Part shown: positions 16,942 through 32,747 of the stretch, in pieces
Position numbering within the stretch: position 1 is the first letter of the stretch
How the letters are laid out: each line of letters starts with the position of its first letter
IMG/VR virus record: IMGVR_UViG_3300034012_003212
Coordinates: 186,001 to 250,000 of that record
Direction: 5' to 3' (one strand)
Length of the DNA stretch: 64,000 bases
The notes under the pieces: generated by a model
What the model saw: only the letters and a program-made list of their open reading frames with translations
Told to the model about the DNA's origin: nothing
The model's database searches: none
Program-made: the position numbers and the translations under genes

Positions 16942-17460
16942 ATGATAGAAATAAATGTAAGAAAAGAAACGTTAGTGTACCTTAGAGAGTGTTCCAAAGA
17001 GGCTTTGGATTCATTTGGGTCCCTTGAGGCCCTTAAGGTGAATGGGCATTTGGATCTCTATTATTGCACTGGGCTCAAGAAGCTGCCTGATGGCCTAATG
17101 GTGAATGGGGATCTGAATCTCTATGGCTGCACAGGACTCACGAAGCTGCCTGATGATCTTAAGGTTGGAAAGCATCTGATTCTATGGAGTTGCCCGGGGC
17201 TCACAGAGCTGCCTGATGATCTCAAGGTGAATGGGAGTCTGAATATATGGAATTGCACGGGCCTCACGAAGCTGCCTGAAGGGCTCAAGGTTGAAGGGAC
17301 TCTGGATCTATGGTATTGCACAGGGATCACGAAGCTGCCTGAAGATCTTCAGGTGGAAGGATTCATATATTATAATGAAGGCACAGGGTTCTATGGACAT
17401 ATGGATGAGCCTGGCGTTATCCCTAACCACCTGAAGAACAAGTTGAAGAAACGTAAATAA
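16942..17460 (+). CDS. capped LRR protein, 5 repeats
   Basis: N-cap, 21-aa LRRs, C-cap. Confidence 0.9.
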   Translation: MIEINVRKETLVYLRECSKEALDSFGSLEALKVNGHLDLYYCTGLKKLPDGLMVNGDLNLYGCTGLTKLPDDLKVGKHLILWSCPGLTELPDDLKVNGSLNIWNCTGLTKLPEGLKVEGTLDLWYCTGITKLPEDLQVEGFIYYNEGTGFYGHMDEPGVIPNHLKNKLKKRK

Positions 17461-17476
17461 GACTTTAAAATAGAAA

Positions 17477-17878
17477 GTGAATATGATGGAAATAGAGGTA
17501 GATGTAGAAACGAGTGTGGTCCTCCGAAGGTGTTCCCAAGAGGCTTTGGATTCATTTGGGTCTCTTGAGGCCGTCAAGGTTAATGGGGATTTGGGTCTGC
17601 ACCGTTGCACAGGGCTCACGGAGCTGCCTGATGATCTCAAGGTGGATGGGTATTTGAGTCTATATGGTTGCCCGGGGATCAAGAAGCTTCCTGGGGGCCT
17701 CAGTGTGAATGGGGACCTGGATCTAGGTCATTGTCCAGGGATCAAGGATCTTCCTGAAGATCTTCAGGTGGAAGGAAGCATATATTATAATTCAAAGACA
17801 GGGTTCTCTGGCCATGAGGACGAGCCTGGCGTGATCCCTGATCATCTGAAGAACAAATTGGAAAAATATGGTAGATGA
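17477..17878 (+). CDS. capped LRR protein, 3 repeats
   Basis: N-cap, 21-aa LRRs, C-cap. Confidence 0.9.
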   Translation: MNMMEIEVDVETSVVLRRCSQEALDSFGSLEAVKVNGDLGLHRCTGLTELPDDLKVDGYLSLYGCPGIKKLPGGLSVNGDLDLGHCPGIKDLPEDLQVEGSIYYNSKTGFSGHEDEPGVIPDHLKNKLEKYGR

Positions 17879-17900
17879 GATTCCAAAATAGAAACTGAAC

Positions 17901-18290
17901 ATGACAGAAATAAAGGTAAAAGAAAAAACACTAGTGAAACTTAGTTGGTGTTCTCAGGAGGCTTTGGATTCATTTGGGTCCCTTGAGGCCCTTAAGGTGA
18001 ATGGGGGGCTGAGTCTCTATTATTGTGTAGGCATCAAGAAGCTGCCTGATGATCTCAAGGTGAATGGATATTTGAATCTCACCAATTGCGCAGGGCTCAC
18101 AGAGCTGCCTGATGGACTCCATGTGAAAGTTAGTGTGATTCTTTATGGTTGCTTAGGGATCACGAAGCTGCCTGATGACCTTCATGTGGGAGAAGAGATC
18201 TGGTATAATTCATACACGGGGTTCTACGGCCGTGTGCATGTGCCCGGTGTGATCCCTAAGCACCTGAAGCGCAAGTTGAAGAAATTTTAA
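17901..18290 (+). CDS. capped LRR protein, 3 repeats
   Basis: N-cap, 21-aa LRRs, C-cap. Confidence 0.9.
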   Translation: MTEIKVKEKTLVKLSWCSQEALDSFGSLEALKVNGGLSLYYCVGIKKLPDDLKVNGYLNLTNCAGLTELPDGLHVKVSVILYGCLGITKLPDDLHVGEEIWYNSYTGFYGRVHVPGVIPKHLKRKLKKF

Positions 18291-18314
18291 GAGATTCCAA
18301 AATAGAAACTGAAT

Positions 18315-18734
18315 ATGAGAAAGAAGAAGATAAAGATACAAGAGAAAACAATAGTGCACCTCTGGAATTGTTCCCAAGAGGCTTTGGATTCATTTGGGTC
18401 CCTTGAGGCCGTCAAGGTGAATGGCGATCTGCGTCTCAATTATTGCACAGGGATCACGAAGCTGCCTGATGGACTCAAGGTGAATGGGTATTTGAGTCTT
18501 ATTGGCTGCACAGGACTCACGAAGTTGCCTGATGGCCTCAAGGTGGATGGGAATTTGAATCTCTTTATGTGTACAGGACTCGCGAAGCTGCCTGAAGATC
18601 TTCAGGTGGAAGGAGTCATATATTATGATTCAGACACGGGGTTCTCTGGCCATGAGCATGAACCTGGTGTGATCCCTACAAGGCTGAAGCACAAGTTGAA
18701 GAAATGGGAGATGAGATTCCAAAATAGAAACTGA
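18315..18734 (+). CDS. capped LRR protein, 3 repeats, read-through tail
   Basis: GAG where siblings have TAG extends ORF through spacer (EMRFQNRN). Confidence 0.9.
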   Translation: MRKKKIKIQEKTIVHLWNCSQEALDSFGSLEAVKVNGDLRLNYCTGITKLPDGLKVNGYLSLIGCTGLTKLPDGLKVDGNLNLFMCTGLAKLPEDLQVEGVIYYDSDTGFSGHEHEPGVIPTRLKHKLKKWEMRFQNRN

Positions 18735-18736
18735 AT

Positions 18737-19126
18737 ATGATAGAAATAGAGGTAAAAGAAAAAACGACAGTGAACCTTCAATGGTGTTCCCAAGAGGCTT
18801 TGGATTCATTTGGGTCCCTTGAGGCCGTCAAGGTGAATGGGGATCTGGGTCTATGGGATTGCAGGGGCCTCACTAAGCTGCCTGATGGACTCAAGGTGAA
18901 TGGGTATTTGAATCTTATTGACTGCACAGGGATCGCAAGACTTCCTAATGGTCTCATTGTGGGAGGGTATCTGCAACTTTATGGTTGCACAGGGATCACG
19001 AAGCTTCCTGATGACCTTCATGTGGAAGAAAAGATCTTGTATGATTCGGACACAGGGTTCTCTGGCCATGAGGACGAGCCCGGTGTGATTCCTAAGCACC
19101 TGAAGCGCAAGTTGAGGAAATATTAA
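18737..19126 (+). CDS. capped LRR protein, 3 repeats
   Basis: N-cap, 21-aa LRRs, C-cap. Confidence 0.9.
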   Translation: MIEIEVKEKTTVNLQWCSQEALDSFGSLEAVKVNGDLGLWDCRGLTKLPDGLKVNGYLNLIDCTGIARLPNGLIVGGYLQLYGCTGITKLPDDLHVEEKILYDSDTGFSGHEDEPGVIPKHLKRKLRKY

Positions 19127-19151
19127 AGGGATTCCAAAATAGAAACTGAAT

Positions 19152-19607
19152 ATGATAGAAATAGAAGTAAAACTAGAAACGAAGGTGGACCTTAGTGAGT
19201 GTTCCCAAGAGGCTTTGGATTCATTTGGGTCCCTTGAGGCCGTCAAGGTGGATCGGTATTTGATTTTTAGGAATTGTCCAGGGCTCACGAAGCTGCCTGA
19301 TGGACTCAAGGTGAATGGGCAATTGAATCTACGTTGGTGCACAGGGCTCACGAAGCTGCCCAAAGATCTTAAGGTTGGAAGCCATCTGGATCTCTATGGC
19401 TGCACAGGACTCACGAAGCTGCCCGATGGACTCCATGTGCAAGGGGGTGTGATTCTTTATGGTTGCTTAGGGATCACGAAGCTGCCTGATGACCTTCATG
19501 TGGGAGAAGAGATCTATTATGATTCGGACACAGGGTTCTATGGCCGTGTGCATGTGCCCGGTGTGATCCCTGAGAGGCTGAAGCACAAATTGAAGAAATG
19601 GGATTGA
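19152..19607 (+). CDS. capped LRR protein, 4 repeats
   Basis: Close paralog of 12346..12801. Confidence 0.9.
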   Translation: MIEIEVKLETKVDLSECSQEALDSFGSLEAVKVDRYLIFRNCPGLTKLPDGLKVNGQLNLRWCTGLTKLPKDLKVGSHLDLYGCTGLTKLPDGLHVQGGVILYGCLGITKLPDDLHVGEEIYYDSDTGFYGRVHVPGVIPERLKHKLKKWD

Positions 19608-19627
19608 TTCCAAAATAGAAACTGAAT

Positions 19628-19954
19628 ATGATGGAAATAGAGGTAAGAAAAGAAACGACGGTGGACCTTGAGTATTGTTCCCAAGAGGCTTTGGATTCAT
19701 TTGGGTCCCTTGAGGCTGTTGGGGTGAATGGGCATTTGTTTCTTGATGGATGCCGAGGGCTCACGGAGCTGCCTGATGGCCTCAAGGTGGATGGGCATTT
19801 GTTTCTCAATTATTGCACAGGGATCACGAAGCTGCCTGAAGATCTTCAGGTGGAAGGATTCATATATTATAATTCAGAGATAGGGTTCTATGGCCATGAG
19901 GATGAACCTGGCGTGATTCCTAAGCACCTGAAGCGCAAGTTGAGGAAATATTAA
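19628..19954 (+). CDS. capped LRR protein, 2 repeats
   Basis: Minimal unit, 108 aa. Confidence 0.9.
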   Translation: MMEIEVRKETTVDLEYCSQEALDSFGSLEAVGVNGHLFLDGCRGLTELPDGLKVDGHLFLNYCTGITKLPEDLQVEGFIYYNSEIGFYGHEDEPGVIPKHLKRKLRKY

Positions 19955-19979
19955 AGGGATTCCAAAATAGAAACTGAAT

Positions 19980-20399
19980 ATGATAGAAATAAAGGTAAGA
20001 AAAGAAACGACGGTGCATCTCTGGAATTGTTCCCAAGAGGCTTTGGATTCATTTGGGTCCCTTGAGGCCCTCAAGGTGAATGGCGATCTGAATCTCTTTA
20101 GGTGCAAAAGACTCACGAAGCTGCCTGACGTCCTCAAGGTGAATGGGGGGCTGAGTCTCAGAAATTGCGCAGGACTCGCGAGTCTGCCTGATGGCCTCAA
20201 GGTGGATGGGCATTTGGATCTCTATGGTTGCTCAGGGATCACGAAGCTGCCTGGCGACCTTCATACGGGAGAAGAGATCTGGTATAATTCAGAGACAGGG
20301 TTCTATGGTCATGAGGATGAGCCCGGTGTGATCCCTGAGAGGCTGAAGCACAAGTTGAAGAAATGGGAGATGAGATTCCAAAATAGAAACCGAATATGA
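19980..20399 (+). CDS. capped LRR protein, 3 repeats, read-through tail
   Basis: Ends EMRFQNRNRI overlapping next start. Confidence 0.9.
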   Translation: MIEIKVRKETTVHLWNCSQEALDSFGSLEALKVNGDLNLFRCKRLTKLPDVLKVNGGLSLRNCAGLASLPDGLKVDGHLDLYGCSGITKLPGDLHTGEEIWYNSETGFYGHEDEPGVIPERLKHKLKKWEMRFQNRNRI

Positions 20400-20725
20400 T
20401 AGAAATAGAGCTACAAAGAGACGCGACAGTGGACCTTATGAAGTGTTCCCAAGAGGCTTTGGATTCATTTGGGTCCCTTGAGGCCGTCAAGGTTAATGGG
20501 GATTTGAATCTGCACCGTTGCACAGGACTCACGAAGCTGCCTGAGGGCCTAATGGTGAATAAGGATTTGTTTCTCAATTATTGCACAGGGATCACGAAGC
20601 TGCCTGAAGATCTTAATGTATATGGAGACATCTGGTATAATTATTGCACAGGGTTCTGTGGCCACGAGGATGAACCTGGAGTGATCCCTGAGAGCCTGAA
20701 GCACAATTTATATAAATTCTCCTGA
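20396..20725 (+). CDS. capped LRR protein, 2 repeats
   Basis: Minimal unit, 109 aa. Confidence 0.9.
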   Translation: MIEIELQRDATVDLMKCSQEALDSFGSLEAVKVNGDLNLHRCTGLTKLPEGLMVNKDLFLNYCTGITKLPEDLNVYGDIWYNYCTGFCGHEDEPGVIPESLKHNLYKFS

Positions 20726-20773
20726 AGTGCAATTTATATAAATTCTAGAGAGATTCCAAAATAGAAACTGAAT

Positions 20774-21163
20774 ATGATAGAAATAAAGGTAAAAGAAAAA
20801 ACGACAGTGTACCTTAGATATTGTTCCCAAGAGGCTTTGGATTCATTTGGGTCCATTGAGTCCCCTAAGGTGGATGGGGATCTGGTTCTATGGCAACACA
20901 CAGGGATAAAGAAGCTGCCTGATGATCTCAGGGTGGCTGGGTATTTGAGTATCAGAAATTGCACAGGGCTCACGGAGCTGCCTGATGATCTCAAGGTGAA
21001 TGGCGGAATGAGTCTCATTGGTTGCTCAGGGATCACGAAGCTACCTGAGGGCATTCATGTGGAAGGAGAGATCTTGTATAATTCAAAGACGGGGTTCTGT
21101 GGCCATGAGGATGAGCCCGGTGTGATCCCTGACAGACTGAAACACAAATTGGAAGAATTGTAG
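20774..21163 (+). CDS. capped LRR protein, 3 repeats
   Basis: N-cap, 21-aa LRRs, C-cap. Confidence 0.9.
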   Translation: MIEIKVKEKTTVYLRYCSQEALDSFGSIESPKVDGDLVLWQHTGIKKLPDDLRVAGYLSIRNCTGLTELPDDLKVNGGMSLIGCSGITKLPEGIHVEGEILYNSKTGFCGHEDEPGVIPDRLKHKLEEL

Positions 21164-21189
21164 ATGAGATTCCAAAATAAAAACAGAAC

Positions 21190-21702
21190 ATGATAGAAAT
21201 AAAGGTGAGAAAAATAACGAGGGTAGTCCTCCGCAGGTGTTCCCAGGAGGCTTTGGATTCATTTGGGTCCCTCAGAGCCCTCAAGGTGAATGGGGATCTG
21301 GATCTAACATGGCACGAAGGGCTCATAGAGTTGCCCGAGGGACTCATAGTTGCAGGGGATCTGGATCTATGGGGTTGTACACTGCTCACAGAGCTGCCTG
21401 AGGGTCTCACTGTAGGAGGGAGTATGGATCTAGACGGTTGCATAGGGCTCACAGAGCTGCCTGAGGGTCTCACTGTAGGAGGGAGTATGGATCTAGAAGG
21501 TTGCATAGGGCTCACAGAGCTGCCTGAGGGTCTCACAGTTGCAGGAAATCTCGATCTCCGAGGTTGTGAAGGAATAACAATGCTGCCCGAAGATCTTCAT
21601 CTAGGAGGAGGCATCTGGTATAACTCAGAGACGGGGTTCTGTGATCAAGAGCATGAACCTGGTGTGATCCCTAAGCACCTGAAGGGTAAGTTGTGGAAAT
21701 AA
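21190..21702 (+). CDS. capped LRR protein, 5 repeats
   Basis: Contains near-perfect 63-bp tandem duplication. Confidence 0.9.
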   Translation: MIEIKVRKITRVVLRRCSQEALDSFGSLRALKVNGDLDLTWHEGLIELPEGLIVAGDLDLWGCTLLTELPEGLTVGGSMDLDGCIGLTELPEGLTVGGSMDLEGCIGLTELPEGLTVAGNLDLRGCEGITMLPEDLHLGGGIWYNSETGFCDQEHEPGVIPKHLKGKLWK

Positions 21703-21724
21703 GATAATAAAATAGAAACTGGGT

Positions 21725-22177
21725 ATGATAGAAATAAAGGTAAGAAAAGAAACGAGGGTAGTCCTCCGCAGGTGTTCCCAGGAGGCTTTGGATTCATTTG
21801 GGTCCCTCAGAGCCCTCAAGGTGAATGGGGATCTGGATCTAATGTATTGCGCAGGGCACATTAAGTTTCCTGATAATCTCATAGTTGCAGGGGATCTGGA
21901 TCTATGGAGTTGCCTAGGACTCACTGAGCTGCCTGATGGCCTCAATGTGGATGGGAGTCTGGATCTATATAATTGCGCAAAACTCACAAGACTTCCTGAT
22001 GGCCTTGTGGTAATGGGGCGGTTGGATCTTAGGTATTGTGCAGGAATAACAATGCTGCCTGAAGATCTTCAGGTGGAAGGAATCATATATTATAATTCAG
22101 AGACAGGGTTCTATGGTCATGAGGATGAGCTTGGTGTGATCCCTGATCATTTGAAGAACAAGTTGATGAAATTTTAA
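21725..22177 (+). CDS. capped LRR protein, 4 repeats
   Basis: N-cap, 21-aa LRRs, C-cap. Confidence 0.9.
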   Translation: MIEIKVRKETRVVLRRCSQEALDSFGSLRALKVNGDLDLMYCAGHIKFPDNLIVAGDLDLWSCLGLTELPDGLNVDGSLDLYNCAKLTRLPDGLVVMGRLDLRYCAGITMLPEDLQVEGIIYYNSETGFYGHEDELGVIPDHLKNKLMKF

Positions 22178-22201
22178 GAGATTCCAAAATAGAAACTGAA
22201 T

Positions 22202-22594
22202 ATGATAGAAATAAATGTAAGAAAAGAAACGGTAGTGAAACTTTATAAGTGTTCCCAAGAGGCTTTGGATTCATTTGGGTCCCTCAGAGCCCTCAAGGTG
22301 AATGGGGATCTGAGTATATGGCATTGTCCAGGGCTCACGGAGCTGCCTGATGGACTCAAGGTGAATGGGTATTTGTATCTTAATGGATGCACAGGTCTCA
22401 TGAGTCTGCCTGATGGCCTTACTGTGGGAGGGAACCTGAGTCTCTATTATTGCGCAGGACTCAAGAAGCTCCCGAAGGGACTCACAGTTTTTGGTGTCAT
22501 ACGGTATACCTCAGGGACGGGATTCTATGGCCATGAGGATGAGCCTGGGGTGATTCCTGAGGGCCTGAAGCATAAGTTGAAAAAAATGGTTTAA
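22202..22594 (+). CDS. capped LRR protein, 3 repeats
   Basis: N-cap, 21-aa LRRs, C-cap. Confidence 0.9.
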   Translation: MIEINVRKETVVKLYKCSQEALDSFGSLRALKVNGDLSIWHCPGLTELPDGLKVNGYLYLNGCTGLMSLPDGLTVGGNLSLYYCAGLKKLPKGLTVFGVIRYTSGTGFYGHEDEPGVIPEGLKHKLKKMV

Positions 22595-22601
22595 ATAGAA
22601 T

Positions 22602-23129
22602 TTGAATATGATAGAAATAGAGGTAAGAAAAGAAACGAGGGTGGAACTTCGAAGGTGTTCCCAGGAGGCTTTGGATTCATTTGGGTCCCTTGAGGCTGTC
22701 AAGGTGAATGGGGATCTGGGTCTATTGTATTGCACGGGGATCACGAAGCTCCCTGGCGCCGTCAAGGTCACAGGGTCCCTGGATCTTAGGTATTGCACGG
22801 GCCTCACAAAGTTGCCTGATGGTCTAAAGGCGGGAGGCCATCTGTATCTACGGAATTGCACAGGACTCACAGGGCTGCCTGATGATCTTATGGTGAATGG
22901 GGATTTGACTCTCAATCATTGCATAAAGCTCACAGGACTGCCTGATGGTCTCAAGGTGAATGGGTATTTGAGTCTATGGAATTGCACAAGACTCAAAGAG
23001 CTTCCTGATGACCTTCATGTGGGAGAAGAGATCTGGTATAATTCAAAGACAGGATTCTATGGACATATGCACGAGCCTGGTGTGATTCCTGATGCCCTGA
23101 AGCGCAAGTTGAGGAAAAATGGTAGATGA
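22602..23129 (+). CDS. capped LRR protein, 5 repeats
   Basis: N-cap, 21-aa LRRs, C-cap. Confidence 0.9.
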   Translation: MNMIEIEVRKETRVELRRCSQEALDSFGSLEAVKVNGDLGLLYCTGITKLPGAVKVTGSLDLRYCTGLTKLPDGLKAGGHLYLRNCTGLTGLPDDLMVNGDLTLNHCIKLTGLPDGLKVNGYLSLWNCTRLKELPDDLHVGEEIWYNSKTGFYGHMHEPGVIPDALKRKLRKNGR

Positions 23130-23151
23130 GATTCCAAAATAAAAACAGAAC

Positions 23152-23541
23152 ATGATAGAAATAGAGGTAAGAAAAGAAACGAAGATGTACCTTAGTGGGT
23201 GTTCCCAAGAGGCTTTGGATTCATTTGGGTCCCTCAGGGCCCTTAAGGTGAATGGGGATTTGAATCTCCTATTTTGTGTAGGGCCCACGAAGCTGCCCGA
23301 TGGGCTCAAGGTGAATATGGGTTTGAATCTTATTGGCTGCACAGGGCTCACGAAGCTGCCTGATGGACTCACTGTTGGAATGAATTTGTTTCTCTATGGT
23401 TGCTCAGGGATCACGAAGCTGCCTGAAGATCTTCAGGTGGAAGGAAGAATATATTATAATTCAGAGACAGGGTTCTATGGTCATGAGGATGAGCTTGGTG
23501 TGATCCCTGAGAGGCTGAAACACAAGTTGGAAAAATGGTAG
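23152..23541 (+). CDS. capped LRR protein, 3 repeats
   Basis: N-cap, 21-aa LRRs, C-cap. Confidence 0.9.
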   Translation: MIEIEVRKETKMYLSGCSQEALDSFGSLRALKVNGDLNLLFCVGPTKLPDGLKVNMGLNLIGCTGLTKLPDGLTVGMNLFLYGCSGITKLPEDLQVEGRIYYNSETGFYGHEDELGVIPERLKHKLEKW

Positions 23542-23567
23542 ATGAGATTCCAAAATAAAAACTGAAT

Positions 23568-23957: not shown

Positions 23958-23981
23958 GAGATTCCAAAATAGAAACTGAAT

Positions 23982-24851: not shown

Positions 24852-24873
24852 GATAATAAAATATGAACTGGGT

Positions 24874-25275: not shown

Positions 25276-25300
25276 AGAGATTCCAAAATAGAAACTGAGT

Positions 25301-25690
25301 ATGATGACGATAAAGGTAAAAGAATACACGAAGGTGGACTTTCGAAGGTGTTCCCAAGAGGCTTTGGATTCATTTGGGTCCCTTGAGGCCCTCAAGGTGG
25401 ATGGGGGTTTGTATTTGGTGGGTTGCACAGGCCTCATGAGGTTGCCTGATGGACTCAAGGTGAATAGGGGTCTGTATTTGGTGGGTTGCACAGGCCTCAC
25501 GAAGCTTCCTGATGGCCTAAATGTGAGACATAGACTGGAGGTCACATGGTGCTCAGGAATCACAAAGCTTCCCTATGATCTTCACGTGGGTGGATACATC
25601 TACTATAATTCAAAGACGGGGTTCTATGGCCATGAGGATGAACCTGGAGTGATCCCTGAGAGGCTAAAGCACAAGTTATATAAATTCTAG
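25301..25690 (+). CDS. capped LRR protein, 3 repeats
   Basis: N-cap, 21-aa LRRs, C-cap. Confidence 0.9.
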   Translation: MMTIKVKEYTKVDFRRCSQEALDSFGSLEALKVDGGLYLVGCTGLMRLPDGLKVNRGLYLVGCTGLTKLPDGLNVRHRLEVTWCSGITKLPYDLHVGGYIYYNSKTGFYGHEDEPGVIPERLKHKLYKF

Positions 25691-25715
25691 AGAGATTTCA
25701 AAATAAAAACTGAAT

Positions 25716-26108
25716 ATGATAGAAATAAATGTAGAAGGACACACGACGGTGGACCTTAGTGATTGTTCCCAAGAGGCTTTGGATTCATTGGGAACGCTTG
25801 ACACACTCAGGGTGAATGGGGGTCTGAGTTTTTTTAGGAATTGCTCAGGGCTCACAAGGCTGCCTGATGGACTCATGGTGAATGGGAATTTGAATCTCGA
25901 TCATTGCATAAGGCTCACAGGGCTTCCTGGTGGTCTCAAGGTGGATGGGCATTTGAGTCTATGGGATTGCAAGGGCCTCACGAAGCTGCCTGATGACCTT
26001 CATGTGGGAGAAGAGATCTATTATGATTCGGACACAGGGTTCTATGGCCGTGTGCATGTGCCCGGTGTGATTCCTAAGCACCTGAAGCGCAAGTTATATA
26101 AATTCTAG
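25716..26108 (+). CDS. capped LRR protein, 3 repeats
   Basis: N-cap, 21-aa LRRs, C-cap. Confidence 0.9.
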   Translation: MIEINVEGHTTVDLSDCSQEALDSLGTLDTLRVNGGLSFFRNCSGLTRLPDGLMVNGNLNLDHCIRLTGLPGGLKVDGHLSLWDCKGLTKLPDDLHVGEEIYYDSDTGFYGRVHVPGVIPKHLKRKLYKF

Positions 26109-26133
26109 AGAGATTCCAAAATAAAAACTGAAT

Positions 26134-26541
26134 ATGATAGAAATAAATGTAAGAAAAGAAACGTCGGTGAACCTTCGAAGGTGTTCCCAGGAGGCTTTGG
26201 ATTCATTGGGAACGCTTGACACACTCAGGGTGAATGGGGGGTTGTTTCTCTATAATTGCACAGGACTCACGAAGCTGCCTGAGGGACTCAAGGTGAATAG
26301 GGGTTTGTATCTTAATGGATGCGCAGGGCTCAGAGAGCTGCCTGATGGACTCACTGTTGGAATGAATTTGGTTCTCTATGGTTGCTCAGGGCTCACGAAG
26401 CTGCCTGAAGATCTTAATGTGGGAGAAGTCATCCGGTCTGATTCAAACACAGGGTTCTCTGGCCGTGTGCATGTGCCTGGTGTGATCCCTAAGCACCTGA
26501 AGGATAAGTTAAGTATCGCATGGTTATCATGGATATCATAG
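26134..26541 (+). CDS. capped LRR protein, 3 repeats, SIAWLSWIS tail
   Basis: Tail identical to 28555..28962. Confidence 0.9.
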   Translation: MIEINVRKETSVNLRRCSQEALDSLGTLDTLRVNGGLFLYNCTGLTKLPEGLKVNRGLYLNGCAGLRELPDGLTVGMNLVLYGCSGLTKLPEDLNVGEVIRSDSNTGFSGRVHVPGVIPKHLKDKLSIAWLSWIS

Positions 26542-26572
26542 TAGAGATAAGATTCCAAAATAGAAACTGAAT

Positions 26573-27025
26573 ATGACAGAAATAAAGGTAAAAGAAAAAA
26601 CGACAGTGAATCTTCAATGGTGTTCCCAAGAGGCTTTGGATTCATTTGGGTTCCTTGAAGCCGTCAAGGTGAATGGGGATTTGGATTTCTATCGTTGCAA
26701 AAGACTCACGAAGCTGCCTGTTGATCTCAAGGTGGCAGGGGAACTGCGTCTCAATCGGTGCACAGAGCTCACAGAGCTACCCGACGATCTCATAGTGGGA
26801 GGGGGCATCTATCTCTATAGCTGCGAAAAGATCACGAAGCTGCCTAGGGGTCTCATAGTGGGAGAGTGGATGAATCTAGGTCAATGCAAAGGGATCACGA
26901 AGCTGCCTAAAGATCTCACAGTTTTTGATGACATATGGTATAACCCAGAGACGGGATTCTCTGGCAGTGTGCATGAGCCTGGTGTGATCCCTGTCCACCT
27001 GAAGCACAAGTTGAAAAACTATTAA
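26573..27025 (+). CDS. capped LRR protein, 4 repeats
   Basis: N-cap, 21-aa LRRs, C-cap. Confidence 0.9.
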   Translation: MTEIKVKEKTTVNLQWCSQEALDSFGFLEAVKVNGDLDFYRCKRLTKLPVDLKVAGELRLNRCTELTELPDDLIVGGGIYLYSCEKITKLPRGLIVGEWMNLGQCKGITKLPKDLTVFDDIWYNPETGFSGSVHEPGVIPVHLKHKLKNY

Positions 27026-27049
27026 GAGATTCCAAAATAAAAACTGAAT

Positions 27050-27508
27050 ATGAGAAAGAAGAAGATACAGATACGAAAAGAAACGCATGTGCAACTTCGA
27101 TGGTGTTCCAAAGAGGCTTTGGATTCATTTAAGTCCCTTGATGCCGCCAGTGTGAATGGGAATTTGAATCTTAGTGGTTGCACAGGACCCACGAAGCTTC
27201 CTGATGGTCTAATCGTAGGAGGGTTTTTATATCTCGGCAATTGCACAGGGCTCAAGAAGCTGCCTGATGGACTCATGGTGAATGGGGATTTGAATCTGTA
27301 TGGTTGCTCAGAGCTCACGAAGCTTCCCGATGGCCTCAGGGTGATTGGGGATCTGGATCTCTGTTATTGCCCAGGGATCAAGGATCTTCCTGCGGATCTC
27401 ATTGTTGACGGTGTTATCACCTATGATTCAGACACGGGGTTCTATGGCCGTGTGCATGTGCCTGGTGTGATCCCTAAGCACCTGAAGAACAAATTGCACA
27501 AATATTAA
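27050..27508 (+). CDS. capped LRR protein, 4 repeats
   Basis: N-cap, 21-aa LRRs, C-cap. Confidence 0.9.
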   Translation: MRKKKIQIRKETHVQLRWCSKEALDSFKSLDAASVNGNLNLSGCTGPTKLPDGLIVGGFLYLGNCTGLKKLPDGLMVNGDLNLYGCSELTKLPDGLRVIGDLDLCYCPGIKDLPADLIVDGVITYDSDTGFYGRVHVPGVIPKHLKNKLHKY

Positions 27509-27533
27509 AGAGATTCTAAAATAGAAACTGAAT

Positions 27534-28055
27534 ATGCTGGAAATACAGGTAAAAGAAGAAACGAAAGTGGACCTTGGGTATTGTTCACAAGAATCACTTG
27601 ATTCCTTGGTGACTATCAAGCGCCTCAATGTGAACGGGGATTTGGATCTATTGGGTTGCCCAGGGATCACAGAGCTGCCTGAAGATCTTAAAGTGGGAGG
27701 GAATCTGGATCTACGTTGGTGTGACGGGCTCACAGAGCTGCCTAAAGAGCTCACCGTCGCTGGGAAACTGAATCTAGAGAATTGCACAGGACTCACGAGG
27801 CTGCCTGAGGGACTCCGTGTGAATGTGTATTTGTTTCTCTATGGTTGCTCAGGGATCAAGAAGCTTCCTGGGGGCCTCAGTGTGAATGGGGACCTGGATC
27901 TAGGTCATTGTCCAGGGATCAAGGATCTTCCTGAAGATCTTCAGGTGGAAGGAAGCATATATTATAATTCAGGGACAGGATTCTTTGGCCATATGCAAGA
28001 GCCCGGTGTGATCCCTGATCATCTGAAGAACAAATTGGAAAAATATGGTAGATGA
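27534..28055 (+). CDS. capped LRR protein, 5 repeats
   Basis: Shares 120-nt identical tract with 17477..17878. Confidence 0.9.
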   Translation: MLEIQVKEETKVDLGYCSQESLDSLVTIKRLNVNGDLDLLGCPGITELPEDLKVGGNLDLRWCDGLTELPKELTVAGKLNLENCTGLTRLPEGLRVNVYLFLYGCSGIKKLPGGLSVNGDLDLGHCPGIKDLPEDLQVEGSIYYNSGTGFFGHMQEPGVIPDHLKNKLEKYGR

Positions 28056-28077
28056 AATTCCAAAATAGAAACTGAAT

Positions 28078-28530
28078 ATGAGAAAGATAAAGGTAAAAAA
28101 AGAAACGAGGGTGAACCTTCAATTGTGTTCCCAAGAGGCTTTAGATTCATTTGGGTATCTCAGCGCCCTCAGGGTGGATGGGTACCTTAATCTCGCTTAT
28201 TGCGCGGGGGCCACGAGGATTCCCGAGGGGCTCAAGGTGAATGGGGATCTGAATCTTAATGGTTGTGTAGGGATCACAAGTCTGCCTGATGGATTCAGGG
28301 TTGGAGGGGATCTGATTCTGTATAAATGTTCAGGGTTCGCGGAGCTGCCTGATGATCTCACTGTTGCAGGGGAATTGTTTCTATGGGGTTGTACAGGGAT
28401 CACAAGTCTGCCTGACGATCTCCATGTGGCAGGAAACATACTTTATGATTCAAAGACAGGATTCTTTGGCCATGTGCACGAGCCTGGTGTGATACCCGGT
28501 AACCTGAAGAACAAATTGAAAGAAATATAA
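28078..28530 (+). CDS. capped LRR protein, 4 repeats
   Basis: N-cap, 21-aa LRRs, C-cap. Confidence 0.9.
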   Translation: MRKIKVKKETRVNLQLCSQEALDSFGYLSALRVDGYLNLAYCAGATRIPEGLKVNGDLNLNGCVGITSLPDGFRVGGDLILYKCSGFAELPDDLTVAGELFLWGCTGITSLPDDLHVAGNILYDSKTGFFGHVHEPGVIPGNLKNKLKEI

Positions 28531-28554
28531 GAGATTCCAAAATAGAAACTGAAT

Positions 28555-28962
28555 ATGATGACGATAAATGTAAAAGAAGAAACTAGGGTGATACTTTATG
28601 AGTGTTCTCAGAAAGCTTTGGATTCATTTGGATCACTCAGCCGGATGAGAGTGGGTGGGTTTCTGAGTTTCTATGGTTGCACAAAGCTCAAAAAGCTGCC
28701 CGATGGCCTCAGGGTACGAGGGGGTTTACAAATTACGTGGTGTGTAGGACTCACGAGGCTGCCCGATGGACTCATTGTCGCAGGTGGGTTGAATCTCGGG
28801 GCTTGCGAAGAACTCACAAGTATCCCTCAAGATCTCCAGGTGGGCGGCACCATCCTCCATGATCAAGGAACGGGGTTCTATGGCCACGAGAATGAGCCTG
28901 GTGTGATACCCGAGATGCTGAAGGATAAGTTAAGTATCGCATGGTTATCATGGATATCATAG
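28555..28962 (+). CDS. capped LRR protein, 3 repeats, SIAWLSWIS tail
   Basis: N-cap, 21-aa LRRs, C-cap. Confidence 0.9.
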   Translation: MMTINVKEETRVILYECSQKALDSFGSLSRMRVGGFLSFYGCTKLKKLPDGLRVRGGLQITWCVGLTRLPDGLIVAGGLNLGACEELTSIPQDLQVGGTILHDQGTGFYGHENEPGVIPEMLKDKLSIAWLSWIS

Positions 28963-28993
28963 TAGAGATAAGATTCCAAAATAGAAACTGAAT

Positions 28994-29389
28994 ATGATAG
29001 AAATAAATGTAAGAAAAAAATACACGAGGGTGGACCTTAGTGAGTGTTCCCAAGAGGCTTTGGATTCATTTGGGTCCATTGAGACCCTCAAGGTGAATGG
29101 GGATCTGAGTCTTCGTGGTTGCTCAGGGCTCACAAGGCTGCCTGATGGCTCCACTGTGGGAGGCGGTTTGTATATTAGTGGTTGCACAGGACTCATAAAG
29201 CTGCCTGATGGCCTCACCGTGGGAGGGCTTCTGAACCTCAGAAATTGCACAGGGATCACAAGACTTCCTGAAGATCTTCAGGTGGGTGGAATGATCTGGT
29301 ATAGTCTAAAAACAGGGTTCTTTGGTCATAAGTATGATCCTGGCGTGATACCCGATAGGCTGAAACACAAGTTGGAAAACCGGTGGTAA
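28994..29389 (+). CDS. capped LRR protein, 3 repeats
   Basis: N-cap, 21-aa LRRs, C-cap. Confidence 0.9.
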   Translation: MIEINVRKKYTRVDLSECSQEALDSFGSIETLKVNGDLSLRGCSGLTRLPDGSTVGGGLYISGCTGLIKLPDGLTVGGLLNLRNCTGITRLPEDLQVGGMIWYSLKTGFFGHKYDPGVIPDRLKHKLENRW

Positions 29390-29414
29390 TAAGGTCGTAA
29401 AATAAAAACTGAAT

Positions 29415-29930
29415 ATGATAGAAATAAATATAAAAGAACATACTCATGTGAACTTCCAGCGGTGTTCTAGGGAATCACTGGACTACTTGGGATCCCTTTA
29501 TGGCTTCAAGGTGAATGGGGAATTGGTTCTTAATGGTTGTGGAAAACTTACAAAGCTTCCAAATAGTCTTATTGTACGTGGGAACTTGGATCTTGTGGAT
29601 TGTGATAATTTAAAAAAGCTTCCCGATGATCTGAAGGTTGGGGGTACTTTATATCTAATGCGCTCTATGCTAAAAAATCTGCCCGACAATCTCGAGATAG
29701 GAGAAGATCTTAGTATTTGGGGATCTATAGAACTTTCATCACTTCCTAGTAGTCTTACTATAGGATCGGATTTTTATTTAGGTAGTTGTTTTAAGCTTAA
29801 AAAACTGCCCGATGATCTTCATGTGGGCGGATACATTTACTATGATTCAAACACAGGATTCTCAGGTCATGTGCATGAGCCCGGTGTGATCCCTGACCAC
29901 CTGAAGCACAAGTTGAAGAAATGGGATTGA
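29415..29930 (+). CDS. capped LRR protein, 5 repeats (diverged body, canonical C-cap)
   Basis: AT-rich diverged repeats joined to canonical KHKLKKWD end. Confidence 0.88.
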   Translation: MIEINIKEHTHVNFQRCSRESLDYLGSLYGFKVNGELVLNGCGKLTKLPNSLIVRGNLDLVDCDNLKKLPDDLKVGGTLYLMRSMLKNLPDNLEIGEDLSIWGSIELSSLPSSLTIGSDFYLGSCFKLKKLPDDLHVGGYIYYDSNTGFSGHVHEPGVIPDHLKHKLKKWD

Positions 29931-29950
29931 TTCCAAAATAGAAACAGAAT

Positions 29951-30406
29951 ATGAGAAAGAAGAAGATAAAGATACAAGAGAAAACAATAGTGGACCTTAT
30001 GAAGTGTTCCCAAGAGGCTTTGGATTCATTTGGGTCCATTGAGGTTGTCAAGGTGAATGGGGATTTGAATCTCTATTATTGCACAGGGATCACGAAGCTG
30101 CCTGATGGACTCAGGGTGGCACTGAGGTTAAGTATTAAATATTGCACAGGGCTTACAGAGCTGCCTGATGATCTCAAGGTGGGGGTGAATATGGATATAC
30201 AAGGTTGCACAGGGCTCACGAAGCTTCCTGGGGGCCTAAGGGTAGGAGGTTATCTGAATCTGCATGGTTGCGCAGGACTCACGGAGCTGCCTGATGATCT
30301 TCAGGTGGGTGGGATGATCTGGTATAATTCAGAAACAGGGTTCCATGGCCATGAGGATGAACCTGGGGTAATTCCTGATCACCTGAAGGACATGTTGTTG
30401 TGGTAG
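29951..30406 (+). CDS. capped LRR protein, 4 repeats
   Basis: N-cap, 21-aa LRRs, C-cap. Confidence 0.9.
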   Translation: MRKKKIKIQEKTIVDLMKCSQEALDSFGSIEVVKVNGDLNLYYCTGITKLPDGLRVALRLSIKYCTGLTELPDDLKVGVNMDIQGCTGLTKLPGGLRVGGYLNLHGCAGLTELPDDLQVGGMIWYNSETGFHGHEDEPGVIPDHLKDMLLW

Positions 30407-30432
30407 TTAGGATTCCAAAATAGAAAAAGAAT

Positions 30433-30888
30433 ATGATGACGATAAAGGTAAAAGAAAAAACATTGGTGGACTTTGATGGGTGTTCACAGAATGCACTCGA
30501 CTCCTTAGTTTCACTTGGATCCCTCAAGATTTCAGGAAATGTGTTCCTCAATTATTGCACAAAGCTCACGAAGCTGCCTGATGGTCTCATTGTAGGAGGT
30601 CATTTGGATCTATGGATGTGCACGAGCCTCACGAAGCTGCCCGATGAATTCAGGGTGAATGGGGATTTGAATCTGTATGGTTGCTCAGGGCTCATGAAGC
30701 TGCCTGATGACCTCAATGTTGCAGGGGATTTGAATCTTTGTGGATGCAAAGGAATCCAGAGCCTGCCTGTTGGTCTCAATGTGAATGGAAACATATGCTA
30801 CGATTCAGAGACGGGATTCCATTGGTTTGAGGGTGATCCAGGAGTTATACCAGATCATCTAAGAAACAAGTTGAAGTTTATTTCATAG
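30433..30888 (+). CDS. capped LRR protein, 4 repeats
   Basis: N-cap, 21-aa LRRs, C-cap. Confidence 0.9.
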   Translation: MMTIKVKEKTLVDFDGCSQNALDSLVSLGSLKISGNVFLNYCTKLTKLPDGLIVGGHLDLWMCTSLTKLPDEFRVNGDLNLYGCSGLMKLPDDLNVAGDLNLCGCKGIQSLPVGLNVNGNICYDSETGFHWFEGDPGVIPDHLRNKLKFIS

Positions 30889-30909
30889 ATTCCAAAATAT
30901 AAACTGAAT

Positions 30910-31365
30910 ATGACAAAGAAGAAGATGAAGATAGAGGTAATAGAAGAAACGAAGGTGAAACTTAGTGAGTGTTCCCAACATGCGTTGGATTCCTTGGCGT
31001 CACTTGGATCCCTCAAGATTTTAGGTAATATGTCTCTCAATTATTGCACAGGACTCACAGGGCTCCCTGATGAACTCAAGGTGGCTGGAGATTTGAATCT
31101 ATGGGATTGTACGAGCCTCATGAATCTATCCGATGACATGAAGATCAAAGGGGATTTAAATCTATGGTCTTGCACAGGACTCACAGGGCTCCCTGGTGGA
31201 CTAGCGGTGATCGGAGATTTGACTCTATATGGATGCAAAGGAATCAAGAGCCTGCCGGATGACCTTCAAGTAAGTCGCATATTCTGTGATGCAAAGACGG
31301 GGTTCTCTGGCCATGAGCATGAGCCCGGCGTGATCCCTGAGAGTCTGAAGCACAAGTTACGTTAA
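30910..31365 (+). CDS. capped LRR protein, 4 repeats
   Basis: N-cap, 21-aa LRRs, C-cap. Confidence 0.9.
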   Translation: MTKKKMKIEVIEETKVKLSECSQHALDSLASLGSLKILGNMSLNYCTGLTGLPDELKVAGDLNLWDCTSLMNLSDDMKIKGDLNLWSCTGLTGLPGGLAVIGDLTLYGCKGIKSLPDDLQVSRIFCDAKTGFSGHEHEPGVIPESLKHKLR

Positions 31366-31390
31366 AGAGATTCCAAAATAGAAACAGAAT

Positions 31391-31843
31391 ATGATAACAA
31401 TAGAAATAAGAAAAGAAACGACAGTGAACCTTAGAGGGTGTTCTCAAGAAGCACTTGATTCCCTGGGAACGCTTGACGCCCTCAAGGTGAATGGGGATTT
31501 GAGTCTATGGCGTTGCACAGGAATCACAAAGCTGCCTGGGGGCCTCAGGGTGAATGGGGATTTGAGTCTATGGGGTTGCACAGGAATCACAAAGCTGCCT
31601 GGGGGCCTCAGGGTGAATGGGGATTTGAGTCTATCGGGTTGCACAGGAATCACAAAGCTGCCTGGGGGCCTCAGGGTGAATGGGGATTTGAGTCTATCGG
31701 GTTGCACAGGAATCACAAAGCTGCCTGAAGATCTTCAGGTGGAAGGAGTCATATATTATAATTCAAAGACGGGGTTCTATGGCTATGAGCATGTGCCTGG
31801 TGTGATCCCTGATCATCTGAAGAACAAGTTGAATAAATGGTAG
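31391..31843 (+). CDS. capped LRR protein, 4 near-identical repeats
   Basis: 63-bp tandem repeat x~4 at 31481-31727. Confidence 0.9.
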   Translation: MITIEIRKETTVNLRGCSQEALDSLGTLDALKVNGDLSLWRCTGITKLPGGLRVNGDLSLWGCTGITKLPGGLRVNGDLSLSGCTGITKLPGGLRVNGDLSLSGCTGITKLPEDLQVEGVIYYNSKTGFYGYEHVPGVIPDHLKNKLNKW

Positions 31844-31869
31844 AGAAGATTATAAAATAGAACCTAGAT

Positions 31870-32259
31870 ATGATGACGATAAAGATAGAAGAAAAAACAA
31901 AGGTGGACTTCACATGTTGTTCTCAGGAAGCTTTAGATTCCTTGTCGTTCCTCGATGGGCTCAAGGTGAATGGGTATTTAAATCTCTTTGATTGCTGGAG
32001 ACTTGAGAAACTCCCTCAGGGTTTTGAGGTGTCGGGTGGTTTGCAAATTGCATGGTGTAGGGGAATCACAAGGTTGCCTAATGGACTCAAGGTGGGCGGG
32101 TGGCTGGGCATCAGACATTGCCCGAAAATTACTGTGCTTCCTGAAGATCTCCAGGTGGGTGAAACAATTAACTATAATGGAGCGACGGGGTTCTATGGCT
32201 ATGAGCATGTGCCTGGTGTGATCCCTGATCATCTGAAGAACAAGTTGAATAAATGGTAG
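31870..32259 (+). CDS. capped LRR protein, 3 repeats
   Basis: C-cap identical to preceding gene. Confidence 0.9.
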   Translation: MMTIKIEEKTKVDFTCCSQEALDSLSFLDGLKVNGYLNLFDCWRLEKLPQGFEVSGGLQIAWCRGITRLPNGLKVGGWLGIRHCPKITVLPEDLQVGETINYNGATGFYGYEHVPGVIPDHLKNKLNKW

Positions 32260-32735: not shown

Positions 32736-32747
32736 TGGGATTTCAAA

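What the first reader, a model, noticed from the sequence alone, without database searches (positions are those of the whole stretch)
16942..32259. Hypervariable codons are mostly NNT inside a C/G-ending framework (DGR-like signature without an RT in view)
Seen: the residue between the two strand leucines uses GAT, AAT, ATT, AGT, GGT, CGT, TTT, TAT, ACT, GCT and CAT, with few exceptions (CAA, GAG). The residue before the first Leu is also mostly NNT, while framework codons are ctc, ctg, aag, gtg, ggg. Established: DGR adenine mutagenesis of AAT/AAC templates yields NNY codons. Inference: either a targeted mutagenic mechanism with an RT or template elsewhere in the genome, or strong positive selection on codon positions 1-2. 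TGG codons at the following positions do not fit a pure AAT template.
Basis: partly seen in the sequence, partly recalled or inferred. Interest (0 to 1): 0.6.

Follow-up and report, generated by a model that had tools for sequence, protein, structure and literature searches.

The report
Huge-phage array of variable LRR genes
A freshwater huge phage carries about 55 tandem copies of a small leucine-rich-repeat gene whose exposed strand residues vary between copies; this comes from gene duplication, shuffling and selection, not from a DGR-type mutator.

Summary
The codon pattern is real. In 143 aligned 63-bp repeat units, the codon between the two strand leucines ends in T in 135. The codon before the first Leu ends in T in 114.

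The DGR reading fails every test I could run:
- The 260.7-kb phage record has no reverse transcriptase, no Avd and no adenine-biased template/variable repeat pair.
- Several adenine columns are conserved, and G, T and C columns are among the most variable.
- Framework synonymous sites have diverged (pS about 0.4-0.5), so no single template is overwriting the units.
- An independent assembly is 100% identical over 5,543 bp of the array.
- An orthologue in a diverged strain keeps all of its variable codons.

The region is a tandem family of small 21-residue LRR proteins. It has 55 genes over window 11389-38941, about 10% of the record. The variable residues are the outward-facing positions of each beta-strand, including the strands of the N- and C-caps.

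NNT is a third base kept by descent while codon positions 1-2 change. Cap positions show NNC and NNG instead. Framework Asn and Asp codons are just as T-biased. dN/dS is about 1.2-2.4 at variable codons and 0.3-0.4 in the framework.

The proteins' function is not shown; a repertoire of binding proteins is my inference.

The parts
11389..15744 (-). Left arm of the array: 9 codirectional small LRR genes (129-194 aa, 3-6 units each).
   Evidence: Family HMM hits with E 3e-45 to 1e-87; ORFs and translations; unit register.
15745..16941 (.). 1.2-kb spacer between the two divergent arms. It is G-rich and low in complexity and holds no family gene.
   Evidence: Sequence read directly. Promoter- and terminator-like sites are no more frequent than in shuffles.
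16942..32259 (+). Each has a 31-residue N-cap, 2-5 units of 21 residues and a 35-residue C-cap.
   Evidence: Codon tables.
32253..38941 (+). Older, more divergent and AT-richer family members: 12 ORFs with HMM E 1e-10 to 3e-52. They still carry the Y-x-x-x-T-G-F motif of the C-cap.
   Evidence: GC falls from 0.46 to 0.37.
17035..17097 (+). One example unit: codons 32-52 of gene 16942-17460, consensus K-V-N-G-x-L-x-L-x-x-C-T-G-L-T-K-L-P-D-G-L. The variable codons are 5, 7, 9 and 10 of the unit.
   Evidence: HMM register; entropy table; predicted strands cover unit positions 5-9.
31391..31843 (+). Gene with four nearly identical 63-bp units (98% matches). The units differ only at unit codons 1, 9 and 10. 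An independent assembly has one unit fewer.
   Evidence: Tandem Repeats Finder; closest unit pairs; L002 offset of 63 bp.
17461..17482 (+). Example of the conserved A-rich spacer of 20-26 nt in front of nearly every start codon. It has no Shine-Dalgarno-like run, and it is duplicated together with the gene.
   Evidence: Column conservation of 0.8-1.0 over the last 22 bases before the ATG in 40 genes; gaps mostly 20-26 nt.

Best explanation
The region is a tandemly amplified family of small cytoplasmic leucine-rich-repeat proteins in a freshwater huge tailed phage. There are 55 genes in two divergent arms over window 11389-38941, about 10% of the record.

The family grows and changes by ordinary processes:
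- duplication of a whole gene together with its spacer;
- gain and loss of 63-bp units;
- exchange of segments between paralogues;
- point substitution.

The framework residues (Leu, Cys, Gly, Pro) are under purifying selection. The outward-facing residues of each beta-strand are free or pushed to change. These are unit positions 5, 7, 9 and 10, plus the in-register positions of the N-cap and C-cap strands.

All units descend from one unit. Nearly all changes at codon positions 1-2 alter the residue, whereas most position-3 changes do not. The variable codons therefore keep their ancestral third base while positions 1-2 run through all four bases. That third base is T in the units, and C or G at the cap positions.

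The residues tolerated are mostly Asp, Asn, Tyr, His, Ser, Gly, Arg, Trp and Phe. Lys and Glu are almost absent. This alphabet is encoded by NNY codons, so the pattern looks like DGR output without any DGR.

Inferred, not shown: the variable sheet is a binding surface, and the array is a repertoire of binders for host or rival proteins inside the infected cell.
For: Phage context: T4-type portal at window 49924-51618 (Pfam E 1.9e-64). The nearest relatives are huge uncultured phages and Lak phages. The record is 260,658 bp.

Family and architecture.

LRR fold:
- The AlphaFold2 model has pLDDT 86.7, with strands at unit positions 5-9.
- All 50 best structural matches are LRR domains; the best is Vibrio FlrP, Z 11.3 over 114 residues.
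- A sequence profile hits the same protein at E 2.3e-16.

Selection, dN/dS at variable codons against framework:
- 1.9 against 0.30 over all unit pairs.
- 2.4 over nearest-neighbour pairs.
- 1.4 when pairs are chosen without bias.
- 1.0-1.15 in the three closest gene pairs.
- 1.2 against 0.41 by parsimony on a tree.

Third base kept by descent:
- Framework AAY is 78:2 and GAY 147:17, like the variable codons.
- Position 3 of codon 7 differs in 13% of neighbour pairs, inside the framework range of 5-31%.
- Gly is GGT at variable codons (61 of 86) but GGG or GGA in the framework.
- Cap strand positions are NNC in 29/40, NNG in 30/40 and NNC in 22/39.

Restricted alphabet: K, E, Q, M and W together make 4 of 146 at codon 7, against 20% genome-wide.

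Recombination and turnover:
- Exact tracts of up to 120 nt are shared by otherwise diverged genes, against a median of 24.
- A unit's nearest relative lies in another gene in 133 of 146 cases.
- One 63-bp unit is lost in L002.
- A related strain has mosaic genes at the array edge, while its flanks are 98.2-99.8% identical.

Stability:
- L002 is 100.000% identical over 5,543 bp.
- Contigs of three lake runs show 0 differences.
- The orthologue in strain L001 has all three units identical in protein.
Against: - dN/dS above 1 is not secure. The unbiased estimates are 1.0-1.4, so relaxed constraint alone could explain much of the variability.
- Codon 7 has the lowest synonymous diversity of all 21 columns (pS 0.18). 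I explain this by residue choice and a family-wide preference for NAT over NAC, not by a measured mutation bias.
- The record is estimated 88% complete, so an RT could lie in the missing part.
- Contigs drop rare variants, so low-frequency diversity within a sample was not tested.
- No evidence of expression, localisation or a binding partner was obtained. The functional part rests on analogy with other LRR families and on one homologue in the early region of a temperate phage.
Confidence: 0.75

Rival explanations
1. A DGR or another template-directed adenine mutator, with its RT and template elsewhere in the genome, writes NNT codons into the repeat units.
For: NNT at 94% of codon 7 and 80% of codon 5, with all four bases at positions 1-2. 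Columns whose commonest base is A are somewhat more variable on average (entropy 1.03 and 1.31 at codon positions 1 and 2). The record is only about 88% complete.
Against: - No RT, no Avd and no adenine-biased repeat pair in the array among 20,062 self-matches.
- Some adenines are conserved right beside variable sites: codon 1 position 1 at 92%, codon 15 position 1 at 94%, codon 12 position 3 at 85%.
- The most variable columns have G, T or C as commonest base.
- Codon 16 shows only A/G at position 1.
- TGG occurs at codons 9 and 10, and NNG at a cap position.
- Framework synonymous divergence (pS 0.4-0.5) shows that no single template overwrites the units.
- The closest gene pair (91% identity) has 0 nonsynonymous changes at its variable codons but 29 elsewhere.
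- The array is identical across independent assemblies and samples.
- The fold is LRR, not the C-type lectin or Ig fold of known DGR targets (the folds of known targets are from my own knowledge and PMC5006420).
Confidence: 0.03
2. The variable positions are simply unconstrained surface residues that drift neutrally after duplication. There is no diversifying selection and no repertoire function; the array may be a selfish or transient amplification.
For: The unbiased dN/dS estimates lie near 1: 1.4 with a range of 0.97-2.0, 1.0-1.15 in the closest gene pairs and 1.2 by parsimony.
Against: - The positions are not free. At codon 7, position 3 changed 9 times on the tree, against 42 and 39 changes at positions 1 and 2.
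- K, E, Q, M and W are almost excluded from codon 7, so residue identity is selected.
- All 55 reading frames are intact, with a framework under purifying selection (dN/dS 0.3-0.4).
- The array is conserved letter for letter in independent samples.
- Look-alike small LRR proteins fill 22 mostly viral clusters in the ESM Atlas.
Confidence: 0.18
3. The array is an assembly artefact: repeats collapsed or chimerically joined, so the apparent paralogues are mixed strains.
For: Short-read contigs break inside the array and show many joints between paralogues.
Against: An independent ENA assembly reproduces 11 consecutive genes without one mismatch over 5,543 bp. Contigs of three other runs match exactly. 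All frames are intact and keep a regular architecture.
Confidence: 0.03

Closest known systems
Tandem LRR gene locus of Flavobacterium psychrophilum and the LRR family of Dictyostelium purpureum (Altae-Tran et al. 2020, PMC10392669)
   Same: Many non-identical LRR genes lie side by side. Hypervariable residues sit on one face of the solenoid. There are signs of unit shuffling and recombination. In Dictyostelium the variable positions are dominated by Tyr, Asp, His and Asn, the same NAY-encoded alphabet.
   Different: Those are cellular genes. The Flavobacterium proteins carry a signal peptide and a type 9 secretion signal and are cell-surface proteins. Here the genes lie in a phage, the proteins are 108-194 aa with no hydrophobic N-terminus, and they have their own N- and C-caps.
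Vibrio FlrP, LRR protein of the polar flagellar motor (PDB 8z5u chain 0; bioRxiv 10.64898/2025.12.04.692373)
   Same: The same short repeat class of about 21 residues, with L-P-x-G-L-x-V-x-G-x-L-x-L. Profile E 2.3e-16 and Z 11.3.
   Different: FlrP is a single periplasmic gene with a Sec signal that binds the flagellar rod. No multigene array and no shared caps. The match says nothing about function here.
DGR variable proteins (Bordetella phage Mtd type)
   Same: Variable codons with a fixed third base and free positions 1-2. The residue alphabet avoids stops and is rich in Asn, Asp, Tyr, Ser and Gly.
   Different: No RT, no Avd and no template repeat. The variation is between paralogues, not between alleles. 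The framework has diverged at synonymous sites. The fold is LRR, not C-type lectin or Ig.
Plant NLR / R-gene clusters and lamprey VLR cassettes (own knowledge)
   Same: LRR arrays that evolve by birth and death and by unequal crossing-over, with diversification of the solvent-exposed x residues in the xLxLxx strand. Plant NLR LRR domains are among the best sequence and fold matches.
   Different: There is no NB-ARC or other signalling domain and no somatic assembly. The genes are viral and very small.
Multigene repeat-protein families of giant viruses (e.g. FNIP/LRR proteins of CroV, PDB 7zal) and poxvirus gene 'accordions' (own knowledge); amplification of anti-defence loci in phage T6 (PMC13096335, abstract only)
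   Same: A virus carries many paralogues of a repeat protein, or amplifies a host-interaction gene in tandem. The CroV FNIP LRR protein is a fold match at Z 7.4.
   Different: Those viruses infect eukaryotes, or the amplification is short-lived. Here the array is stable, old enough to have diverged, and sits in a tailed phage.

Membership tests
Diversity-generating retroelement (target/variable repeat) | Reverse transcriptase (RVT_1 type) in the element or genome | tested here: not met
   PF00078 search of the whole 260,658-bp record found 0 candidates; the controls were positive. Caveat: the record is estimated 88% complete.
Diversity-generating retroelement (target/variable repeat) | Accessory Avd-type four-helix-bundle protein | tested here: not met
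   PF05635 search found 0 candidates. That Avd belongs to this Pfam family is from my own knowledge.
Diversity-generating retroelement (target/variable repeat) | Template repeat / variable repeat pair that differs almost only at template adenines | tested here: not met
   Of 20,062 self-matches with at least 7 mismatches, none inside the array has 70% or more A (or T) on one side. The 9 biased matches elsewhere are Gly-X-Y collagen-like repeats.
Diversity-generating retroelement (target/variable repeat) | Non-adenine positions of the variable repeats are identical | tested here: not met
   Framework pS is 0.48. Synonymous columns such as codon 8 position 3 (C 60, A 44, T 30, G 9) vary freely.
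Diversity-generating retroelement (target/variable repeat) | Allelic hypervariability between individuals or samples | tested here: not met
   100.000% identity over 5,543 bp with an independent assembly. 0 differences in contigs of three runs. The orthologue in a diverged strain has identical units. Rare variants were not testable with contigs.
Leucine-rich repeat superfamily | Tandem units of 20-30 residues with the L-x-x-L-x-L-x-x-N/C core | tested here: met
   Units of 21 residues in strict register with x-L-x-L-x-x-C and L-P.
Leucine-rich repeat superfamily | Solenoid fold with one parallel beta-strand per unit | tested here: met
   The model has pLDDT 86.7, with strands at positions 5-9 of each unit. 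All 50 best VIA-align matches are LRR domains, with Z up to 11.3. Foldseek alone gave only weak matches.
Leucine-rich repeat superfamily | Match to a curated LRR profile above its threshold | tested here: not met
   The Pfam LRR_1 and LRR_EndoS hits are all below their gathering scores. The profile match to the solved LRR protein FlrP is significant, E 2.3e-16.
Hypervariable tandem LRR gene arrays (Flavobacterium type, plant R-gene type) | Many paralogues side by side in one locus | tested here: met
   55 family ORFs over window 11389-38941.
Hypervariable tandem LRR gene arrays (Flavobacterium type, plant R-gene type) | Variability concentrated at solvent-exposed strand positions | tested here: met
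   Residue entropy is 2.9-3.6 bits at positions 5, 7, 9 and 10, against 0.2-0.6 at the Leu, Cys and Pro positions. These positions alternate with the core leucines inside the predicted strands. In-register positions of both caps vary too. That they face outward is inferred from the alternation, not read from coordinates.
Hypervariable tandem LRR gene arrays (Flavobacterium type, plant R-gene type) | dN/dS above 1 at the variable positions | tested here: inconclusive
   Estimates are 1.9, 2.4, 1.4, 1.0-1.15 and 1.2, depending on method.
Hypervariable tandem LRR gene arrays (Flavobacterium type, plant R-gene type) | Recombination or shuffling of units and genes | tested here: met
   Shared exact tracts of up to 120 nt. 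Unit-number polymorphism. A mosaic gene in strain L001, whose first 105 nt are 98% identical to another paralogue.
Hypervariable tandem LRR gene arrays (Flavobacterium type, plant R-gene type) | Secretion signals (Sec / type 9) as in the Flavobacterium proteins | tested here: not met
   The N-termini are charged (M-I-E-I-K-V-R-K-E-T...) with no hydrophobic stretch, read directly. No signal-peptide predictor was run.

The most novel reading that the evidence does not exclude
The array is a phage-borne repertoire of about 55 small LRR binders. It is diversified by duplication and paralogue shuffling, and each member recognises or blocks a different host (or rival-phage) protein inside the infected cell. 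That would make it a viral counterpart of NLR- or VLR-type recognition repertoires, and it would account for about a tenth of the genome.
Probability: 0.3. Interest if true: 0.75.

Novelty: new variant of a known kind. Interest (0 to 1): 0.45.

Why it matters
For the scan: a fixed third base with free first and second bases is not enough to call a DGR. A young repeat family under diversifying or relaxed selection gives the same picture. The cheap controls are:
- third-base conservation at framework codons;
- adenines at synonymous positions;
- a comparison between strains.

For phage biology: tailed phages rarely keep paralogues. Here about 55 intact copies of one small binder scaffold take up roughly 10% of a huge phage genome. 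They are stable across lakes and years, while the array edge differs between strains. Look-alike small LRR proteins fill many mostly viral clusters that carry no name or Pfam family in the Atlas. A function found here would therefore annotate a large unnamed class. If the proteins are binders, they would also be a natural library on a very small, single-domain scaffold.

Tried and rejected
- **Relatives in viral contigs.** A search of IMG/VR viral contigs with the family alignment confirmed no relative. PHROGs gave no meaningful family, and Pfam hits were all below threshold.
- **Promoters and terminators.** Scans found no excess over shuffles in the spacer or the arrays. Transcription units remain unknown.
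- **Template/variable repeat scan.** It flagged 9 short A- or T-biased matches outside the array. I opened those at genome 258 kb, with their partners at about 99.5-102.9 kb, and they are collagen-like Gly-X-Y repeats, not DGR parts. The two others (genome about 12-17.5 kb) were not opened.
- **Inversion hypothesis.** I suspected that strain L001 differs from the window by a simple inversion between inverted paralogues. The junction gene is instead a mosaic of several paralogues, so I dropped the idea.
- **Nearest-neighbour dN/dS.** The value of 2.4 is inflated by the way pairs were picked. The split-sample control gave 1.4.
- **Literature.** Searches found no description of LRR arrays in phages or of LRR targets of DGRs.
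- **Not run.** The large representative protein search, because no claim here rests on absence of relatives. Complex prediction, because no partner is proposed.

Full report
**Where the window lies.** The window is bases 186001-250000 of a single 260,658-bp virus record. The record is linear and estimated 88% complete. A T4-type portal gene lies at window 49924-51618 on the minus strand (Pfam PF07230, E 1.9e-64; PHROG portal). Its nearest relatives in the phage collection are huge uncultured phages (41% identity) and the Lak megaphages. Parts of the array sequence occur in lake and freshwater metagenomes of 15 studies. This is a freshwater huge tailed phage.

**What the region is.**
- Nine genes lie on the minus strand at 11389-15744.
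- A 1.2-kb G-rich spacer follows, at 15745-16941.
- Forty-six ORFs lie on the plus strand from 16942 to 38941. The last twelve (32253-38941) are more divergent and AT-richer.
- Four further family ORFs lie elsewhere in the genome. One of them is a 320-aa protein with 13 units.

Each array protein has a 31-residue N-cap, 2 to 6 units of exactly 21 residues, and a 35-residue C-cap with a conserved Y-x-x-x-T-G-F ... G-V-I-P motif. Nearly every gene is preceded by the same A-rich spacer of 20-26 nt, which has no Shine-Dalgarno-like run. The duplicated module is therefore gene plus spacer.

**Fold.**
- Pfam gives only sub-threshold LRR hits.
- An AlphaFold2 model built on 12 paralogues has mean pLDDT 86.7. 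It has one strand per unit, at unit positions 5-9, plus one strand in each cap.
- Foldseek found only weak matches, all LRR.
- The exhaustive structural search gave LRR domains in all 50 best rows. The best is Vibrio FlrP at Z 11.3 over 114 of 129 residues.
- A sequence profile hits FlrP at E 2.3e-16 and plant NLR LRR domains at E 1e-11 to 1e-7.
- FlrP is a periplasmic rod-binding protein. The match defines the repeat class, not the function.

**The observation.** In 143 units from 43 genes the counts of NNT codons are as follows:

| Unit codon | NNT of 143 | Note |
|---|---|---|
| 7 (between the two leucines) | 135 | |
| 5 (before the first Leu) | 114 | |
| 10 | 108 | |
| 9 | 82 | TGG 19 times |

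Genome codon usage predicts only about half as many: 70 expected at codon 7, z = 11.7.

**Why NNT.** Four results place the pattern in an ordinary frame.
1. Third bases are frozen all over the unit, whatever the base. Codon 6 ends in G in 94% of units, codon 14 in C in 93%, codon 18 is CCT in 84% (z = 13.6), and codon 12 ends in A in 85%. In nearest-neighbour pairs, position 3 of codon 7 differs in 13% of pairs. That lies inside the framework range of 5-31%.
2. Asn and Asp codons at non-variable unit positions are as T-biased as those at variable positions: AAY 78:2 and GAY 147:17, against 74:5 and 84:7. In the caps and genome-wide they are not.
3. Four-fold boxes follow descent, not preference. 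Gly is GGT at the variable codons (61 of 86) but GGG or GGA in the framework. This is expected if GGT arose from GAT or AGT by one change.
4. The caps give a natural control. Their strands have in-register variable positions with other frozen third bases: NNC in 29 of 40 (N-cap), NNG in 30 of 40 (N-cap) and NNC in 22 of 39 (C-cap).

The general rule is 'positions 1-2 vary, position 3 is inherited'. T is only the letter that the ancestral unit happened to carry.

**Residue choice adds to it.** At codon 7, K, E, Q, M and W together make 4 of 146, against 20% of residues genome-wide. Lys is nearly absent from all four variable positions. On a tree of the units, codon 7 changed 42 and 39 times at positions 1 and 2 but only 9 times at position 3. 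The position is therefore variable within a restricted alphabet (Asn, Asp, Ser, Phe, Tyr, Ile, Gly ...). That alphabet is encoded by NNY codons. From my own knowledge, the same Tyr/Asp/Asn/Ser/Gly-rich, Lys/Glu-poor make-up is typical of binding sites. It was also reported for the hypervariable LRR positions of Dictyostelium purpureum (PMC10392669).

**Tests of the DGR reading.**
- *Parts.* The record has no RT and no Avd-type protein. None of 20,062 self-matches in the array shows 70% or more of its mismatches at A or T on one side. Nine biased matches lie elsewhere; those I opened (genome 258 kb and their partners at 99.5-102.9 kb) are collagen-like Gly-X-Y repeats.
- *Adenines.* Some adenines are conserved next to variable sites: codon 1 position 1 at 92%, codon 15 position 1 at 94%, codon 12 position 3 at 85%. 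The most variable columns have G, T or C as commonest base.
- *Framework.* Framework synonymous sites are well diverged (pS 0.48). That cannot happen if a template keeps overwriting the units.
- *Closest gene pair.* At 91% identity it has no nonsynonymous change at its 16 variable codons but 29 elsewhere.
- *Independent assembly.* An ENA assembly is 100.000% identical over 5,543 bp, or 11 genes. The only difference is the loss of one 63-bp unit in the gene with four near-identical units.
- *Other samples.* Contigs of three lake runs lie on the array without a single difference.
- *Diverged strain.* In a strain whose flanks are 98.2-99.8% identical, the orthologue of gene 17483-17878 has all three units identical in protein. 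It differs only in the caps.
- *Variant contigs.* The differences seen in the variant contigs of run X4 are spread over caps, framework and variable codons. They start from all four bases.

The variability is between paralogues, not between alleles.

**Selection.** dN/dS at codons 5, 7, 9 and 10 depends on the method:

| Method | Variable codons | Framework |
|---|---|---|
| All unit pairs | 1.9 | 0.30 |
| Nearest-neighbour pairs (pair choice biased) | 2.4 (2.1-2.8) | 0.35 |
| Pairs picked on half the framework, measured on the other half | 1.4 (0.97-2.0) | about 0.3 |
| Three closest gene pairs | 1.0-1.15 | 0.39-0.46 |
| Parsimony counts on a tree | 1.2 | 0.41 |

The caps give about 0.5-0.6. 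The variable codons evolve at or somewhat above the neutral rate inside a constrained scaffold. Diversifying selection is likely but not proven.

**How the array changes.**
- A unit's nearest relative lies in another gene in 133 of 146 cases. It is at the same relative position (first, middle or last) in 99 of 146. Whole-gene duplication therefore dominates.
- Exact tracts of up to 120 nt are shared by otherwise diverged genes, against a median of 24.
- Unit number is polymorphic.
- In strain L001 the array edge holds another gene order. One gene there is a mosaic: its first 105 nt are 98% identical to the start of gene 28078, and its end is 88% identical to gene 19628.

**Function (inferred).** The N-termini have no hydrophobic stretch, so the proteins should stay in the cytoplasm or be packaged in the virion. 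The only cultured-phage homologue is in Edwardsiella phage Edno5. It is a single gene in the early region between the CI repressor and exo/RecT. From my own knowledge, lambdoid phages keep host-takeover and exclusion genes in that region. The ESM Atlas holds 22 look-alike clusters that are 97-98% viral, the largest with 1,437 members, and all are unnamed.

My best reading is a repertoire of small binders aimed at variable host or rival proteins. This is an analogy, not a result.

**Verdict.** The DGR interpretation is rejected, and the selection alternative is supported in a moderate form. The object itself, a stable 55-gene LRR array in a phage, is a new variant of a known kind of locus and is of moderate interest.

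Noticed in passing
window 7327-7400 (-) and 8172-8246 (-): Two phage tRNA genes: tRNA-Met (CAT) and tRNA-Arg (CCT). AGG is the commonest Arg codon in the phage's long ORFs, at 36%.
   Followed up: partly
window 15745-16941: The spacer between the two arms is G-rich and low in complexity, with runs such as GGAGGGGGAGGGGGAGGGG near 16680-16705 and CT-rich tracts. It holds an ORF at 15781-16095 (-) with a long acidic tail. There is no Rfam, Pfam or PHROG match and no excess of promoter-like sites.
   Followed up: partly
window 38945-64000, mostly minus strand: A block of large ORFs (up to 831 aa) around the T4-type portal. Nine of the ten ORFs tested have no Pfam match, and eight have no PHROG match. 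This is probably the structural module of a poorly known huge-phage lineage.
   Followed up: partly
genome 256942-260658 (+) and about 99500-102900 (-), outside the window: Very long collagen-like Gly-X-Y repeat ORFs. One is at least 1,239 aa and runs off the end of the record. They produced the only adenine-biased self-matches that I opened.
   Followed up: partly
genome 26221-27183 (-), 136717-137436 (+), 180132-181090 (-), outside the window: Four further family members away from the array, one of them a 320-aa protein with 13 units. Whether one of them is the progenitor was not examined.
   Followed up: no
window 16942-32259, last 22 nt before each start codon: The spacer before the start codons is conserved, A-rich and without a Shine-Dalgarno-like run. 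From my own knowledge, such initiation regions are usual in Bacteroidota. That would fit the predicted hosts of the nearest huge-phage relatives, but no host was tested.
   Followed up: no
L001 1-10579 against window 2346-12801: A related strain is 98.2-99.8% identical in 15 flanking genes, yet has a different, mosaic set of LRR genes at the array edge. The array is a hot spot of turnover between strains.
   Followed up: yes
window 16000-34000: There is strong strand asymmetry over the young part of the array: GC skew +0.19 to +0.26, and GC 0.43-0.48 against about 0.40 elsewhere. Framework codons such as GGG are the rarest of their box genome-wide, at 12% of Gly codons. This suggests a recent burst from one unit with atypical codons, or a foreign origin.
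   Followed up: partly
window 12340-31716, strand opposite to the genes: Long open frames run antisense to many array genes, for example 18851-19363 (-) with 170 aa. They repeat with the units and are most likely a by-product of the repeat's composition, not genes.
   Followed up: no
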